A stretch of 64,000 nt of DNA from Selaginella moellendorffii (taxonomy: Eukaryota; Plantae; Lycopodiophyta): assembly GCF_000143415.4 (NCBI RefSeq), contig NW_003314278.1:1324673-1388672 (forward strand), in the 5' to 3' direction. Positions 40,553 to 61,110 of this stretch are shown here, piece by piece. A program made the translations under genes and the position numbers. Positions within the stretch are counted from its first letter, which is position 1. The number at the start of each line of letters is the position of its first letter. A model generated the notes under the pieces. That model ran no database searches. It was not told the origin of the DNA and was given only the letters and a program-made list of their open reading frames with translations.

Positions 40553-41336
40553 GGAGGCTGCATATTTGCTATCAATGGGAGCCCATATTTGCTATCTTCT
40601 TGCATTTTGAGCCTTTCTCCCCTTCTGCCAGACTTTGTCTTATAGGTGCCGACCATTGTAAGTATCCACGCACGTACGCTAGTCCCACCAATGCCTCCGA
40701 TAAGTAACCAGTACGCAGCTCGCGCATGTCAAAACGTTAGATCAAGGTACCGTTTTGGTCATTCCCATCACTCCAGTCTCACGAGGTTTTTGCAGATATG
40801 TCGATACATTCAACAAAGGTAGCGTAACACCATCCAAGACATCATCGGACTCTCCTCCACTGTTTGGCGTGGTGCCAAAGGCAAGCGCAAAGCCTTTGGC
40901 TCCAGCGAGATTTTTTGTGCCTGCGGCCGCTGCTGCCGCTGCTCCAGATATCAACAGCAACCATTCGGTGGATCCTTCCTCGGCACCAACCTTTGTCTCC
41001 GACACCGCATTCTCAAACGGGAATGGAACATTCGCTCAGCTGGTTGTACAGGATATGAGAAATGATCCGGGGCCAACGCCTGATCATCTCTCGAGCAGCT
41101 CTTCGCCAGCAATGTTCTATTCGAATCACTATCCAGCAGCACCGTCGACCGTCTCGTTGCCACCACCTCCAGCGCTGCAAGTCACTCCGCCAGTGATGGT
41201 CGAGCAGCAGCAGCAAAACCAACACCAGGAAAGTTCGATTCATCGGCACCACCATCAACAGTCTGGCACAGTGGGATTCGAAGCTGCCAGTTCCTCCGGA
41301 GTGTTTGGAGACGACTTGCAAGAGGTGGAATTGTAA
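40553..41336 (+). pseudogene. SEC16: Second SEC16 fragment, with a ~1-kb internal deletion, directly downstream of the RRP5 fragment
   Basis: HICY..FEPFSPSARLCLIGADHCKYPRTYASP is joined at ~40686 straight to the PPMPP..NQYAARA..RSRY exon, then YVDTFN..DDLQEVEL*. It is the inverted copy of 37350-37470 and 35517-36321. Confidence 0.85.
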
Positions 41337-41554
41337 ATCACACTCCACAAGTAAGTAGTGTTGCTGGGTGGATTTTCGTAGAGCAGTGTAGTTAAGTAGT
41401 AGTCGTGGAAGGAGGAAATTTTTTTGGCTGGGGTGATTCTTTGGAGCCACGAGCGAAGCGAAAGTTGCTAGAGAAAGGAAACTCTTTACAGTGTAACAAA
41501 TAAAAGCCAAGGCCTTGTGATGAATATACCTCGAATAATCTCCCGGATTTAAAT

Positions 41555-42105
41555 ATGGCGCAGGTAGCTCACAAGGCATCGTCTTGGTGGGATGAAACGC
41601 TGGTTGTCTACGCGCGGTGTGGGCATTTGGAGGAATCGAGAAGGATCTTTGACGCATTGCCGGCCAAGAACATCGCGTCGTGGACGGCGCTCGCGACCGC
41701 ATATGCCGAGAGTGGGCATCCGGGGGAGGCCAAGGCAGCGTTCGATCGAATGGCGGTGTGGGACGTAGTTTCCTCCACTGCGATGGTCGAGGCGCTGGGC
41801 GATTGCGGGCGGATTGGATCGAGCAAGGCGGTGTTTGATGCGATGCCCGAGAGGAACTGCAAGACGTGGGCGATGCTGCTGCGGGGATTTGCTAGATTGG
41901 AGGAGCAAGAGAAGTGCTGGATCGGATGCCCGAGATGAATGTGGTAGCGTGGACGATCCTCGTGCAGGGTTTCACGCAGCGCGGGCGAGTGGGCGATGCG
42001 AAGGCTGCGTTTGATTCCATGCCCGAGAAGAACAGCATCACTCGCGTGGTGATGCTCGTCATGTTTGCGGAGAATGGATTCGTGAGGAGGCGGAGACAAA
42101 GATAA
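41555..42105 (+). pseudogene. PLS-class PPR fragment (tandem short S/SS-type motifs), frameshifted
   Basis: YARCGHLEESRRIFDALPAKNIASWTALATAYAESGHPGEAKAAFDRM... and, in the next frame, DRMPEMNVVAWTILVQGFTQRGRVGDAKAAFDSMPEKN. Confidence 0.85.
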
Positions 42106-53406: not shown

Positions 53407-53733
53407 NNNNNNNNNNNNNNNNNNNNNNNNNNNNNNNNNNNNNNNNNNNNNNNNNNNNNNNNNNNNNNNNNNNNNNNNNNNNNNNNNNNNNNNNNNNNNN
53501 NNNNNNNNNNNNNNNNNNNNNNNNNNNNNNNNNNNNNNNNNNNNNNNNNNNNNNNNNNNNNNNNNNNNNNNNNNNNNNNNNNNNNNNNNNNNNNNNNNNN
53601 NNNNNNNNNNNNNNNNNNNNNNNNNNNNNNNNNNNNNNNNNNNNNNNNNNNNNNNNNNNNNNNNNNNNNNNNNNNNNNNNNNNNNNNNNNNNNNNNNNNN
53701 NNNNNNNNNNNNNNNNNNNNNNNNNNNNNNNNN
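53407..53733. other. Assembly gap (N run)
   Basis: Run of N. Confidence 1.
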
Positions 53734-54415: not shown

Positions 54416-57157
54416 ATGTGTGCGGCGCTAGGGTTTGTGTGGTGTGTGTCATTTCTCAACAATCTCATGGAGTGGAAAACGTTTTTCAGGGATCCCACTT
54501 TCTGGTGGGACAACAGGTTCAAGAAGAAAAACAAGTTCTTCTCAGAGTCCTACCCGGATTTCAAACATGTTTCTACCGGAGAGAGCCTCTGGATCGCCAA
54601 CAGGAAAACACCGACCTGGGTCTCTGCAAAACTCGAGGCGCTCGCTGACCCAGCTGTAGGTAAGGCCACCACGGCCCGCTACAAATCTCCACATACCCCA
54701 CCTGTAGCTGGTGATGAACCGGTGAGTTTAGGGAGGCTGATACACCGCGTGAGAGACTCAGCTGAGAGCAGATCCCTTTCTTTGGGAAAACAAGCCCATG
54801 AAGCTGTGCTCAAGAGTGATGAGCACAAAAGCAACATCTACTTGTTGACGGGATTGATCGATATGTACTGCAAGTGTGGCGAGCTTAAGGAGGCTCGCAA
54901 GATTTTCGACTCCATGGGAACCCGGAGTGTTGCGTCCTACAACGCGATCATCCAGGGCTGCGGCTCGAACGGGCAAGCTGAACTTGCTCTGGAGTACTAC
55001 TCTGCCCTGAGAGCTTGTACCACCATTCAACCCAACGATCGGACACATGTCGCGGTGATCAGCGCCTGCTCCAGACTTGCTACCGAATCCAGCGAGAAGA
55101 GGGAGAGGGCTCTACGCATTGGGATGGAGATCCATTCAATGCTGAGCAAGGAGAAGAAACAGCTAGATCTGTTCGTGGCGACTTGCCTGGTAGACATGTA
55201 CTCCAAGTGTGGCGAGCTTGAGGAGGCTCGCAAGATTTTCCACTCCATGGGAACTCGGAGTGTTGTGTCCTACACCGCGATCATCCAGGGGTGCAACACG
55301 AACGGGCGAGCTGAACTTGCTCTGGAGTACTACTCTGCCCTGAGAGCTTGTACCACCATTCAACCCAACGATCGGACTCATGTCGCGGTGATCAGCGCCT
55401 GCTCCACACTTGCTACCGAATCCAGCGAGAAGAGGGAGAGAGCTCTACGCATCGGGATGGAGATCCATTCAATGCTGAGCAAGGAGAAGAAACAGCTAGA
55501 TCTGTTCGTGGCGAATTGCCTGGTAGACATGTACTGCAAGTGTGGTGAGCTTGAGGAGGCTCGCAAGATTTTCCACTCCATGGGAACTCAGAGTGTTGTG
55601 TCCTACAACGCGATCATCCAGGGCTGCGGCTCGAACGGGCAAGCTGAAGTTGCTCTGGAGTACTACTTTGCCCTGAGAGCTGATAACACCATTCAACCCG
55701 ACGATCGGACACATGTCGCGGTGATCAGCGCCTGCTCCACACTTGCTACCGAATCCAGCGAGAAGAGGGAGAGAGCTCTATGCATCGGGATGGAGATCCA
55801 TTCAATGCTGAGCAAGAAGAAACAGGTAGATCTGTTCGTGGCGAATTGCCTGGTAGACATGTACTGCAAGTGTGGCGAGCTTGAGGAGGCTCGCAAGATT
55901 TTCGACTCCATGGGAACCCGGAGTGTTGTGTCCTACAACGCGATCATCCAGGGCTGCGGCTCGAACGGGCAAGCTGAAGTTGCTCTGGAGTACTACTCTG
56001 CCCTGAGAGCTTGTACCACCATTCAACCTAACGATCGGACCCATGTCGCGGTGATCAGCGCCTGCTCCACACTTGCTACCGAATCCAGTGAGAAGAGGGA
56101 GAGAGCTCTACGCTTCGGGATGGAGATCCATTCAATGCTGAGCAAGGAGAAGAAACAGCTAGATCTGTTCGTGGCGAATTGCCTGGTAGACATGTACTGC
56201 AAGTGTGGCGAGCTTGAGGAGGCTCGCAAGATTTTCGACTCCATGAGAACCCGGAGTGTTGTGTCCTACAACGTGATCATCCAGGGCTGCGGCTCGAACG
56301 GGCAAGCTGAACTTGCTCTGGAGTACTACTCTGCCCTGAGAGCTTGTACCACCATTCAAGCTAATGCTTGCACCTACACCTGCGTCCTTGTTGCTTGCGG
56401 GAGTGTGATGGCGATCAAGCTCGGGAGGGAGATTCACCAGCTGGCGAAGCATGAAGGGCTGCTGAAAAACAATCCAGTTCTGGGCTCCAGCCTGGTGAGC
56501 TTCTACGGCAAATGCGGCGATGTTGATTCTGCTCAGGAAGCGTTTGACGAGTGCCGAGCTCGGGACGACACGGGTCTCTGGAACTCTCTCATACAGGCTT
56601 ACACTCTCCAGGGCCGATCGATCGAGGCCTTGGAGCGTTTCTATTCCATGACTCAGGAGGAGGGCTGTAAAGCTGACGATGTGAGTTTTGTCTCGGTGTT
56701 GAACGCTTGCAGCCATGGTGGTCTGGTCGGGAAAGGAAGGCAGCTTCTGGATGAAATGCCCAAGCAGTATGGAGTCAAGCCACGTCTGGAGCATTATGTG
56801 TGCCTGATCGATATGCTCGGGCGAGCTAACCTCCTCGACGAAGCTGTGAGAGTTCTCAGAACCATGCCTTTTGAACCGGATGCAGTGGTTTGGACGTCCC
56901 TGCTCGGAGCCTGCCGGAAGTGGAAGAATTACACGATCGGCAAACTTGCATTTGAGCGTCTTGTGGAGATGGATCCCAAGAGCGGCACGCCCTACGCATT
57001 GATGGCCAATATATTTGGAAACCTGGGGATGCTCAGTGAAAGGGCCGCTGTTGTGGAGAGAATGAGAGGTGAAGGCAGCTTCAGGGAGCCCGGGAGAAGC
57101 TGGTGGACGGATGTTAGCTCTCTTTCTCTTCCTCGGGTATGTCTTTTAGAACGTTGA
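54416..57157 (+). CDS. PLS-class PPR RNA-editing-factor-like protein with an N-terminal OSB-type PDF motif. ORF stops shortly after the PG box because of an internal inversion; alternative start at 54467
   Basis: 913-aa intronless ORF. WKTFFRDPTFWWDNR..K..YPDFKHVSTGESLW..TPTWV at the N-terminus; S-P-L triplets; P2-L2-S2 (SVLNACSHGGLV, EHYVCLIDMLGRANLLDEA); E1/E2 (VVWTSLLGAC, PYALMANIF); PGRSWW. Confidence 0.92.
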   Translation: MCAALGFVWCVSFLNNLMEWKTFFRDPTFWWDNRFKKKNKFFSESYPDFKHVSTGESLWIANRKTPTWVSAKLEALADPAVGKATTARYKSPHTPPVAGDEPVSLGRLIHRVRDSAESRSLSLGKQAHEAVLKSDEHKSNIYLLTGLIDMYCKCGELKEARKIFDSMGTRSVASYNAIIQGCGSNGQAELALEYYSALRACTTIQPNDRTHVAVISACSRLATESSEKRERALRIGMEIHSMLSKEKKQLDLFVATCLVDMYSKCGELEEARKIFHSMGTRSVVSYTAIIQGCNTNGRAELALEYYSALRACTTIQPNDRTHVAVISACSTLATESSEKRERALRIGMEIHSMLSKEKKQLDLFVANCLVDMYCKCGELEEARKIFHSMGTQSVVSYNAIIQGCGSNGQAEVALEYYFALRADNTIQPDDRTHVAVISACSTLATESSEKRERALCIGMEIHSMLSKKKQVDLFVANCLVDMYCKCGELEEARKIFDSMGTRSVVSYNAIIQGCGSNGQAEVALEYYSALRACTTIQPNDRTHVAVISACSTLATESSEKRERALRFGMEIHSMLSKEKKQLDLFVANCLVDMYCKCGELEEARKIFDSMRTRSVVSYNVIIQGCGSNGQAELALEYYSALRACTTIQANACTYTCVLVACGSVMAIKLGREIHQLAKHEGLLKNNPVLGSSLVSFYGKCGDVDSAQEAFDECRARDDTGLWNSLIQAYTLQGRSIEALERFYSMTQEEGCKADDVSFVSVLNACSHGGLVGKGRQLLDEMPKQYGVKPRLEHYVCLIDMLGRANLLDEAVRVLRTMPFEPDAVVWTSLLGACRKWKNYTIGKLAFERLVEMDPKSGTPYALMANIFGNLGMLSERAAVVERMRGEGSFREPGRSWWTDVSSLSLPRVCLLER
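54835..56360 (+). repeat. Tandem array of ~4.6 near-identical units (333, 333, 330, 333 bp), each one S-P-L PPR triplet of 111 aa
   Basis: Periodicity is visible in the DNA and in the antisense ORF starts 55248, 55581, 55911, 56244. Confidence 0.95.
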
Positions 57158-57277
57158 TCACATCACTCACGTACCCCTCCTCTTTCATTCTCAGCAACAA
57201 TTGCTTGAGCTTGGCCGTAATCTCGTCGCTCTGTGAGTGACTCCTATCCCTGACAGAAAAAGAATGCACTTTTCCTG
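57118..57277 (-). other. Inverted segment encoding the E+/gating part of the DYW domain
   Basis: Minus strand reads GKVHSFSVRDRSHSQSDEITAKLKQLLLRMKEEGYVSDVINVLKDIPEEEKE, exactly the segment expected between SWWTD and xxLCGHSEK. Confidence 0.92.
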
Positions 57278-57502
57278 GATCACCTGTGCGGCCACAGTGA
57301 GAAGCTTGCGCTGGGGTGTGCTCTGGTGAACTCGCAGCAGAAGGAGACCATCAGAATTGTGAAAAATCTCCGAGTTTGTGACGATTGCCATGCGGCCACT
57401 GCTCTCATCTCTAAGCTGGAAAAAAGGCTAATCATCTGCAAAGATGCCAGTCGGGTTCATGTGTTCCATGATGGCAGATGTTCCTGTGACAACTACTTTT
57501 GA
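57278..57502 (+). CDS. Catalytic C-terminal half of the DYW cytidine deaminase domain, in frame with the upstream ORF
   Basis: DHLCGHSEKLALGCALVNSQQKETIRIVKNLRVCDDCHAATALISKLEKRLIICKDASRVHVFHDGRCSCDNYF*. HxE, CxxCH, HxF and CSC are intact; ends NYF. Confidence 0.9.
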   Translation, partial: DHLCGHSEKLALGCALVNSQQKETIRIVKNLRVCDDCHAATALISKLEKRLIICKDASRVHVFHDGRCSCDNYF

Positions 57503-59877: not shown

Positions 59878-61110
59878 TTGCATCGGCCTGTGGTGGGTGA
59901 AGCCTTGAATGTCACCACCTGGAGTAAGTTTTCTTTGGAGTATTACGATGTGGGGAGGTGGAAGAGGAAACTTCAGATGGAGAAGAGGACCTTCTTCACC
60001 ATTTGTGGCATGCTGGAGAGTGAGATCCGGAAGCAAGATACCGGTTGGAGGAGTGTGGTGCCGGTGGATGTTCGACTGTGGGTAACTTTGTACAAGCTTT
60101 TCAAGAACACAGATTACTTGGATCTGGCAGACAAGTTCGGCATTGGGGAGTCCACAGCTCATGAGATTGTCATGGACACTACTGTGGCAATTGTCAAGTG
60201 TCTCAGGTACAAGATTCATTTTCCTTCAACCGCCAATGAGGTTCAAGCTGTTACTGCTGGCTTTCGACAAGTGACAGGTACATTTTCTTATGTTTTTTGG
60301 ATTGTTATAAGTTTTGATGACCAATGCCTAATGTTGCTGGGGCGATCGACTACTAGACTGGACGGCGAGAGCTACTACGACTGGAAGCAGCGGTACTCGG
60401 TCATCTTGCAAGGGGTTTGTGATGCCCAGAAGAGGTTGCTCAGTGTCTATGCTGGTGGCCAGGATGGTTCTAAAATGTTCTTTTTGCTCGTCCACGACAA
60501 GAGGGTTTTTCGTAATTCAACCCTCAGGAACAAGATTGTAGCAAGGGAGCTGCTGACATCACCCGCGGTGTTAGCATATGGTGATAGGATCAAGCCATAC
60601 CTAGTGGGGGACAAAGGGTACCAACTCCAGCAGCATCTGATGATTCCACACACAAGTAAGTCTTCTTCATTCTACTTTCTTTTGTTCACTTGTTTTGGTT
60701 GTTGCTCAACTCCGAACCCGACACCATCCAAGGCAGCTTTCAACCTTCATCACCACCTTGCTCGGATTGTTATTGAGCAAGCATTTGGACTTCTTAAAAT
60801 GAAGTTCAGATGCTTGGATCAAAAACAAAGGATCCAGCCAAAGTACCTTCCCAACATCATCAAGAGTTGTTGCATCTTGCACAATTTCTTGATTGATGTT
60901 GGGGAGACTGATCTTCAGGTGGAGATCCAAGCTTGGAGGAAAGAGGTGAAAAGGCTCAAGGACCAGGACCTCTTTGTCGATTACGGTGATCCCGAGCAAG
61001 CGGAAGGGGAACCTTGTGAGGAGTTGCACAGTCCAGAGGATGCGAAAGAGGTTAGAGAGAACCTCACGTTTTCCCTCTGTCTTTGCCAGTGGCGTTCGTG
61101 TTTGCTTTGA
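59878..61110 (+). pseudogene. PIF/Harbinger transposase (HARBI1-like), probably defective
   Basis: RWKRKLQMEKRTFFTIC; LADKFGIGESTA; YYDWKQRYSVILQGVCD; HDKRVF; YLVGDKGY; RIVIEQAFGLLKMKFRCL; CCILHNF. The first catalytic motif PNVAGAID (~60327-60350) is out of frame and followed by a stop; two T-rich intron-like stretches are read through by the ORF caller. Confidence 0.85.

What the first reader, a model, noticed from the sequence alone, without database searches (positions are those of the whole stretch)
57110..57281. ~160-bp in-place inversion flips the E+/gating segment of the DYW domain
Seen: after PGRSWWTDV the + strand becomes unrelated sequence and stops at 57157. The minus strand of 57275-57120 encodes an uninterrupted GKVHSFSVRDRSHSQSDEITAKLKQLLLRMKEEGYVSDVINVLKDIPEEEKE. 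The + strand resumes at 57278, in the original frame, with DHLCGHSEK..CDDCH..CSCDNYF*. Re-inverting 57120-57277 gives one open 1028-codon gene (WWTDVSSGKVH...EEEKEDHLCGHSEK). Neither part has stops or frameshifts, so the event looks recent. Established: E/E+ editing factors are DYW-truncated proteins that keep the PG box and borrow a DYW domain in trans. Inference: this may be a DYW-to-E-class conversion caught in the act, by inversion rather than deletion, or a polymorphic allele. No flanking inverted repeat longer than 3 bp was found.
Basis: partly seen in the sequence, partly recalled or inferred. Interest (0 to 1): 0.8.

Follow-up and report, generated by a model that had tools for sequence, protein, structure and literature searches.

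The report
Inherited 158-bp inversion disabling PPR-DYW genes
A spikemoss (Selaginella moellendorffii) RNA-editing-factor gene really has a 158-base piece of its deaminase domain flipped in place, but the same flip sits in at least three other gene copies that are decaying further, so it is an inherited gene-killing lesion in a very large young gene family, not a fresh change of protein class.

Summary
The PPR gene at 54416-57502 (+) stops 13 codons after the PG box. The minus strand of 57120-57277 encodes the E+ motif and the start of the DYW deaminase. The + strand resumes in frame at 57278. Flipping the 158 bases back gives one 1028-codon ORF.

It is not an assembly artefact, and it is not a unique fresh event. 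The organism is Selaginella moellendorffii (assembly GCA_000143415.2). Among 12 near-identical paralogues read at DNA level, four carry the same inversion with the same left junction, and the three that keep the right junction share that too: W, and copies on GL377592.1, GL377722.1 and GL377582.1. Their flipped segments differ at 3-7 bases.

Three of the four have further lesions (frameshifts, or a 159-base replacement). None of six non-inverted copies checked has a frame-breaking indel. So the flip was inherited through duplications and marks pseudogenes; W is the least decayed.

Contigs of four public runs show only the non-inverted form, but they mostly carry other paralogues' alleles. One contig joins W-specific alleles to a non-inverted segment. 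This is unexplained, so a non-inverted allele at W is not excluded.

No transcript with the inverted junction was seen.

The parts
54416..57157 (+). Truncated ORF as encoded: N-terminal region, PLS-type PPR array, E motif, PG box, then 13 out-of-context codons and a stop (913 codons).
   Evidence: PPR_2 E 1.4e-76, PPR E 1.4e-73, E_motif E 2e-9
54863..56359 (+). Internal tandem repeat of 333 bp (one P-L-S triplet, 111 codons), 4.5 copies, 95% alike. The number of units differs between paralogues.
57089..57115 (+). PG box (PGRSWWTDV), the last canonical residues before the left junction.
   Evidence: the same motif is found in all paralogues
57120..57277 (-). The 158-bp inverted segment. On the minus strand it encodes the E+ motif and the first ~21 positions of the DYW deaminase profile. 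Left junction 57119/57120, right junction 57277/57278 (1-nt ambiguity).
57278..57502 (+). C-terminal part of the DYW deaminase in the original frame. It holds HSE (57293-57301) and CDDCH (57377-57391), ends in ...CSCDNYF and stops at 57500-57502. It is not translated as the gene now stands.

Best explanation
W is one member of a very young, heavily amplified family of PPR-DYW organellar RNA-editing-type genes in Selaginella moellendorffii. In an ancestor of a sub-lineage of this family, a 158-bp piece between the PG box and the HxE zinc site was cut out and rejoined in reverse. No base was lost or gained, and there is only 1 nt of microhomology at each end. This fits two double-strand breaks repaired by end joining, or a replicative template switch (inferred). 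The flip puts a stop 13 codons after the PG box and removes the whole deaminase from the reading frame. The broken gene was then copied along with its neighbourhood by segmental duplication, or its C-terminal tract was spread by ectopic gene conversion. It now sits at four or more assembled places. These copies evolve as pseudogenes, and W is simply the one that has not yet picked up a second lesion. RefSeq annotators have turned such copies into false E-only or intron-containing models.
For: Shown. (1) The inversion is exact and restorable. (2) Among 12 copies read at DNA level, L001-A (GL377592.1), L004 (GL377722.1) and L006-A (GL377582.1) share the left junction of W, and L001-A and L004 also share the right junction 158 nt further on. 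Eight copies are non-inverted. (3) The inverted segments differ from each other at 3-7 positions, so they are separately assembled copies. (4) W and L006-A lie about 140 kb apart on one scaffold. This placement comes from two matching distances to annotated family members (and note s1-432111). (5) Extra lesions: L001-A has a 1-nt deletion; L004 has a 9-nt deletion, a 1-nt deletion and a 1-nt insertion; in L006-A the W-equivalent 57201-57359 is replaced by a 156-nt copy of the 3' UTR. There are no indels in six non-inverted copies, and the three non-inverted loci scanned full-length (L001-B, L002, L003) are single open frames of 1246-1491 codons. (6) In the best ML tree of the flanking sequence the four inverted copies form one clade, though with weak support of 48/5.7. 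(7) No contig collinear with the inverted junction was found in four public runs, two of which look like RNA. Inferred: the repair mechanism; duplication rather than conversion as the way it spread; loss of function.
Against: W has no second lesion in 3.1 kb. That is somewhat unexpected if the inversion is as old as the 2-6% divergence between inverted copies suggests. The ratio of non-synonymous to synonymous changes is only slightly higher in inverted copies (43:18) than in intact ones (38:24). The clade of inverted copies is not statistically supported. A contig of run X2 carries the three alleles that are unique to W among 12 copies (56861 A, 56947 T, 56950 A) and then continues in the non-inverted orientation. 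So a non-inverted allele of W may exist. Logan contigs drop rare variants, so missing inverted-junction transcripts do not prove silence.
Confidence: 0.78

Rival explanations
1. Polymorphic or heterozygous inversion at the W locus. One haplotype, the assembled one, acquired the flipped tract from an already inverted paralogue by ectopic gene conversion. The other haplotype, or other plants, keeps an intact gene.
For: X2 record 15 has 0 differences from W over 56730-57120, including the three alleles unique to W among 12 copies. It then joins 57120 to 57276 on the opposite strand, which is the non-inverted form. It is the only X2 contig covering that stretch. The family shows mosaic sharing of alleles, typical of gene conversion.
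Against: The segment part of that contig carries consensus alleles (for example 57218 C) rather than W's. It may therefore be a de Bruijn chimera between W and another paralogue across the 170 nt they share. None of the sampled inverted copies matches W's segment closely enough to be a donor (4-7 differences). Many family copies were not sampled and could carry the same left alleles.
Confidence: 0.15
2. Functional class switch. The truncated product (PPR array, E motif and PG box) is made and works as an E-type specificity factor that recruits a deaminase in trans. The inverted copies were retained and duplicated because of that function.
For: W keeps a 913-codon open frame with an intact PPR array. 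Trans-complementation of E/E+ proteins by DYW proteins is established in angiosperms (general knowledge; listed in PMC13386178). That paper also counts many E-subgroup PPR models in lycophytes.
Against: Two of the three other inverted copies are frameshifted upstream of the junction, so their PG box is already out of frame. The ORF lacks the E+ motif. No inverted-junction contig was found even in the deep RNA-like run X3. Some E-only RefSeq models here (P0147, P0128) are direct by-products of this inversion, so counts of the E subgroup may be inflated.
Confidence: 0.05
3. Assembly or cloning artefact: the segment is not inverted in the plant.
For: All contigs crossing the junctions in four public runs show the non-inverted form. 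The window is a scaffolded draft with an N gap nearby (53407-53733).
Against: The same junctions occur in four separately assembled copies on three scaffolds, with different internal substitutions and different secondary lesions. Most of the run contigs carry alleles of other paralogues, not of W. A 158-bp inversion with exact abutting junctions is shorter than the ~700-800-nt capillary reads I assume this draft was built from (from memory, not checked).
Confidence: 0.02

Closest known systems
PLS-class PPR-DYW organellar C-to-U RNA editing factors of land plants
   Same: W has a PLS repeat array, an E motif, a PG box, an E+ motif and a DYW deaminase with HxE and CxDCH. All parts are present in the DNA. 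Intact paralogues have them in the canonical order.
   Different: In W the E+ motif and the first fifth of the deaminase lie on the opposite strand, so the encoded protein stops after the PG box. The family also has unusual details: the PG box reads PGRSWWTD and the C-terminus reads NYF instead of DYW.
E/E+ subclass PPR editing factors (C-terminally truncated; deaminase supplied in trans, e.g. with DYW1 or DYW2 in Arabidopsis)
   Different: The truncation comes from an inversion, not a deletion. The E+ motif is absent from the product. Sister inverted copies are frameshifted. No expression evidence was found. Trans partners are known from seed plants (from memory), not shown for lycophytes.
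Microinversions: small in-place inversions without flanking repeats, attributed to end joining or template switching
   Same: It is short (158 bp), exactly in place, with no gain or loss of bases and 1 nt of microhomology at each junction.
   Different: It lies inside a coding domain and has been multiplied to four or more copies by later duplication of the gene. This makes it a shared derived marker within a gene family.
Duplicated pseudogenes in expanded PPR families
   Same: Copies that share one founding lesion then gather private frameshifts and rearrangements. S. moellendorffii has the largest PPR count reported, 3,861 (PMC13386178).
   Different: The founding lesion here is an inversion, which gene predictors hide by inventing an intron (P0008) or by ending the model early (P0147, P0128).

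Membership tests
PPR-DYW (PLS-class) RNA editing factor | Array of P, L and S pentatricopeptide repeats | tested here: met
   PPR_2 E 1.4e-76 in 12 stretches and PPR E 1.4e-73 in 14 stretches
PPR-DYW (PLS-class) RNA editing factor | E motif followed by PG box, E+ motif and a contiguous DYW deaminase domain in one reading frame | tested here: not met
   The E motif and PG box are in frame. The E+ motif and DYW profile positions 1-21 are on the minus strand. DYW positions 22-92 lie after a stop. The feature is met in paralogue L002.
PPR-DYW (PLS-class) RNA editing factor | Zinc-binding HxE and CxxCH residues of the deaminase | tested here: met
   HSE at 57293-57301 and CDDCH at 57377-57391 are intact in the DNA, but they lie outside the translated ORF
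PPR-DYW (PLS-class) RNA editing factor | Editing activity at an organellar site | not testable with these tools
E/E+ class PPR editing factor | Protein ends after the E or E+ motif and is expressed | tested here: inconclusive
   The ORF ends 13 codons after the PG box without an E+ motif. No contig with the inverted junction was found in four runs, but contigs can drop rare forms.
E/E+ class PPR editing factor | Works with a DYW deaminase supplied in trans | not tested
   No partner was searched for. Two of three sister inverted copies are frameshifted before the PG box.
Microinversion by end joining or template switch | In-place reversal with no flanking inverted repeat and no base gained or lost | tested here: met
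   The segment is 158 bp, with 1-nt ambiguity at the ends. Re-inversion restores the frame exactly and aligns base for base with non-inverted paralogues.
Inherited (shared) lesion in duplicated pseudogenes | The same breakpoints in several paralogous copies that differ elsewhere | tested here: met
   The left junction is identical or one substitution off in W, L001-A, L004 and L006-A. The right junction is shared by W, L001-A and L004. The segments differ at 3-7 nt.

The most novel reading that the evidence does not exclude
The inversion is still segregating at the W locus: the assembled haplotype is inverted, and another haplotype or plant is intact and expressed. In that case the flip reached W by ectopic gene conversion from an inverted paralogue 140 kb away. 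A small inversion would then be moving between members of a gene family as a unit, switching individual editing-factor genes off.
Probability: 0.12. Interest if true: 0.55.

Novelty: new member of a known kind. Interest (0 to 1): 0.3.

Why it matters
The main value is as a caution and as a marker. A small in-frame-restorable inversion is invisible to gene predictors. RefSeq models of the inverted copies either invent an intron across it (XP_024536027.1) or end as E-only proteins (XP_024531996.1, XP_024522895.1). Counts of truncated E-class PPR proteins in lycophytes may therefore partly reflect such lesions. The shared breakpoint is also a clean derived character for tracing how this very young family of 35 or more models multiplied in the plant with the largest known PPR repertoire. 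It does not show a new way of making E-class editing factors.

Tried and rejected
(1) Reads as a direct test. All junction-crossing contigs in X1, X16, X2 and X3 are non-inverted. At first this looked like proof of an assembly error. I rejected that reading after aligning paralogues: the X1, X16 and X3 contigs differ from W at exactly the sites where W is unique, so they come from other copies. Read laying allows one call, so no second mapping was possible.

(2) Exact look-up of W's own products (913-aa ORF, the ORFs starting at two internal Met codons, the 58-aa DYW tail, and an unrelated ORF at 41016-41702) found nothing in the protein collection. W seems not to be annotated.

(3) I searched for a flanking inverted repeat or longer microhomology. 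None lies at the junctions.

(4) Rescue by splicing. GT at 57137 and AG at 57296-57297 would remove most of the segment, as in model P0008. In W the next codon is then TGA, so there is no rescue (my reading). No skip joint was seen in the runs.

(5) A selection test by N:S counts gave 43:18 against 38:24, which is too weak to decide.

(6) The tree of flanks is star-like. The inverted clade is present but unsupported.

(7) Two literature searches found no description of this inversion.

(8) A word search of the scan's own notes found no other note of the inversion.

Full report
**Observation.** The window holds a PPR gene on the + strand.
- The ORF 54416..57157 (913 codons) ends ...PGRSWWTDVSSLSLPRVCLLER*. 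Pfam finds PPR repeats and an E motif in it.
- The minus strand of 57120-57275 matches the whole E+ motif (positions 1-28 of 28, E 6.9e-8).
- The + strand 57278-57499 matches DYW_deaminase positions 22-92 of 93 (E 1.7e-26).
- Re-inverting 57120-57277 in a script gives 1028 codons with one terminal stop.
- The ends have a 1-nt ambiguity (C...G), so 57121-57276 is equivalent. No base is missing or added, and there is no flanking inverted repeat.
- An intact paralogue shows the canonical order E motif, E+ motif, DYW positions 1-92.

**Organism and family.** The nearest proteins are NCBI models of Selaginella moellendorffii, from assembly GCA_000143415.2. Cluster look-ups list about 35 near-identical models on at least 12 scaffolds.

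Two earlier scan notes give distances to neighbouring family members: 101,634 letters before the window and 21,327 after it. These match the annotated positions of P0002 (gene ends at 1,223,039) and P0121 (gene starts at 1,409,999) on GL377582.1. I therefore place the window at about 1,324,674-1,388,673 of that scaffold. This is an inference from two coincidences, not a sequence overlap.

- Every contig crossing the junctions has the middle piece on the opposite strand, which is the non-inverted form. The loose ends say the same.
- Depth tables show no extra contig collinear with the window across the left junction.
It does not hold up. In an alignment with paralogues, the X1, X16 and X3 contigs differ from W at exactly the positions where W is unique (56861, 56947, 56950, 57165, 57218, 57337, 57469, 57714), plus 57169, which W shares only with L001-A. 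They come from other, non-inverted family members.
- Only X2 carries W's left-flank alleles (0 differences in 391 nt), and that contig nevertheless continues non-inverted with consensus alleles. These three alleles are unique to W among 12 copies.
- That contig is either a de Bruijn chimera across the 170 nt shared by the copies, or a sign of a non-inverted allele.

**The same inversion elsewhere.** Three RefSeq models betray the inverted left junction in their sequence: P0008, P0128 and P0147. I examined 12 copies at DNA level.

| Copy | Location | Orientation | Junctions and notes |
|---|---|---|---|
| W | window (GL377582.1, about 1.379 Mb) | inverted | both junctions |
| L001-A | GL377592.1, about 0.92 Mb | inverted | both junctions, identical to W |
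| L004 | GL377722.1 | inverted | both junctions, one substitution each |
| L006-A | GL377582.1, about 1.24 Mb | inverted | left junction kept; right junction lost |
| L001-B, L002, L003, L005, L006-B, L007, L008, L009 | various | non-inverted | canonical order |

- The four flipped segments differ from each other at 3-7 positions, so they are separately assembled sequences.
- W and L006-A lie about 140 kb apart on one scaffold, so they are different loci.
- An assembly or cloning artefact is therefore excluded for practical purposes.
- Independent recurrence at identical bases without any repeat is very unlikely, so a single origin is the reasonable reading.
- In the best ML tree of the flanking sequence the four inverted copies form one clade, but with weak support (48/5.7) in a star-like tree. 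Duplication after the flip and spread by gene conversion therefore both remain possible.

**Fate of inverted copies.**
- L001-A has a 1-nt deletion 17 codons before the junction.
- L004 has a 9-nt deletion, a 1-nt deletion and a 1-nt insertion.
- In L006-A the W-equivalent 57201-57359 is replaced by a 156-nt direct copy of the 3' UTR.
- The six non-inverted copies in that comparison have no indel. L001-B, L002 and L003 are single open frames of 1246-1491 codons.
- Three of four against none of six gives a Fisher exact p of about 0.03 (my calculation).
- Non-synonymous to synonymous counts are 43:18 for inverted copies and 38:24 for intact ones. The direction fits relaxed constraint but the difference is not significant.
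- W has no second lesion.

**Mechanism.** A clean reversal with 1-nt microhomology and no repeat fits rejoining after two double-strand breaks, or a replicative template switch. This is inference.

The consequence is shown directly: a stop 13 codons after the PG box, with the HxE and CxDCH sites out of the translated frame. Splicing cannot rescue W. The GT at 57137 and the AG at 57296-57297 that RefSeq uses in model P0008 would be followed by TGA in W's frame (my reading), and no skip joints appear in the runs.

**Comparison with known things.** W is a broken member of the PLS-class PPR-DYW editing factors. It resembles E-class factors only in where the ORF ends. It lacks the E+ motif, and two of its three sister inverted copies are frameshifted before the PG box.

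A 2026 survey counts 3,861 PPR genes in this species and many E-subgroup models in lycophytes (PMC13386178). Two of the E-only RefSeq models seen here are by-products of this inversion.

Two literature searches found no description of the inversion.

**Verdict.** The feature is real and correctly described. It is best read as an inherited microinversion that disables a sub-lineage of a young PPR-DYW family, with W the least decayed copy. It has modest general interest, and is useful for annotation and as a phylogenetic marker. The open point is whether W also has a non-inverted allele.

Noticed in passing
window 54863-56359; L001-L003: The PPR array contains a 333-bp tandem repeat (one P-L-S triplet), 4.5 copies at 95% identity. 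The number of units differs between paralogues: open frames run 1246-1491 codons in L001-B, L002 and L003, against 1028 for W when restored. RNA-binding tracts in this family therefore change length by unit gain and loss.
   Followed up: partly
window 59878-61107 (+); L006 13833-14401; L007 13153-13851: A PIF/Harbinger-type transposase ORF (DDE_Tnp_4 E 3e-23, Plant_tran, HTH_Tnp_4) lies 2-3 kb downstream of the PPR gene in W and in at least two paralogous loci. The duplicated unit therefore carries a transposase gene. Whether the transposon drives the amplification was not examined.
   Followed up: no
L001 3711-14323; L006 1621-12423: Two loci (GL377592.1 and GL377582.1) each hold a head-to-head pair of family copies, one intact and one inverted. 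The two loci are 95.5% identical over 7.6 kb, so the pair was duplicated as a block, or the loci are diverged haplotypes.
   Followed up: partly
L006 10794-10949: In the inverted copy L006-A, the stretch equivalent to window 57201-57359 (159 nt, including the right junction) is replaced by a 156-nt direct copy of the gene's own 3' UTR. This is a second small rearrangement of almost the same size at the same place.
   Followed up: partly
P0001, P0002, P0008, P0121-P0154 against L001-L009: RefSeq models of this family are short (250-780 aa) and have invented introns, although the three non-inverted loci scanned full-length (L001-B, L002, L003) are single long open frames. Model P0008 splices out most of the inverted segment, and P0147 and P0128 end as E-only proteins. 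L001-B, L006-B and W seem to have no model at all.
   Followed up: partly
window 56730-57276 (run X2, record 15): A contig from a 2015 run carries the three alleles unique to W among 12 copies and then joins the segment in the non-inverted orientation with consensus alleles. It is either a chimeric contig or a non-inverted allele of W. This is unexplained.
   Followed up: partly
C-termini of L001-B, L003, P0121, P0002: Some intact-looking paralogues have changes at conserved deaminase positions: CDGCH instead of CDDCH (P0002, P0121), and terminal NCF or KYF instead of NYF. Several non-inverted copies may therefore also be drifting.
   Followed up: no
window 54416-54900: Earlier scan notes describe an OSB-type PDF motif at the N-terminus of this family. 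Pfam finds nothing there except the first PPR. I did not test the claim further.
   Followed up: no
window 53407-53733: There is a 327-N scaffold gap 0.7 kb upstream of the gene start. The promoter region of W is therefore incomplete in the assembly.
   Followed up: no
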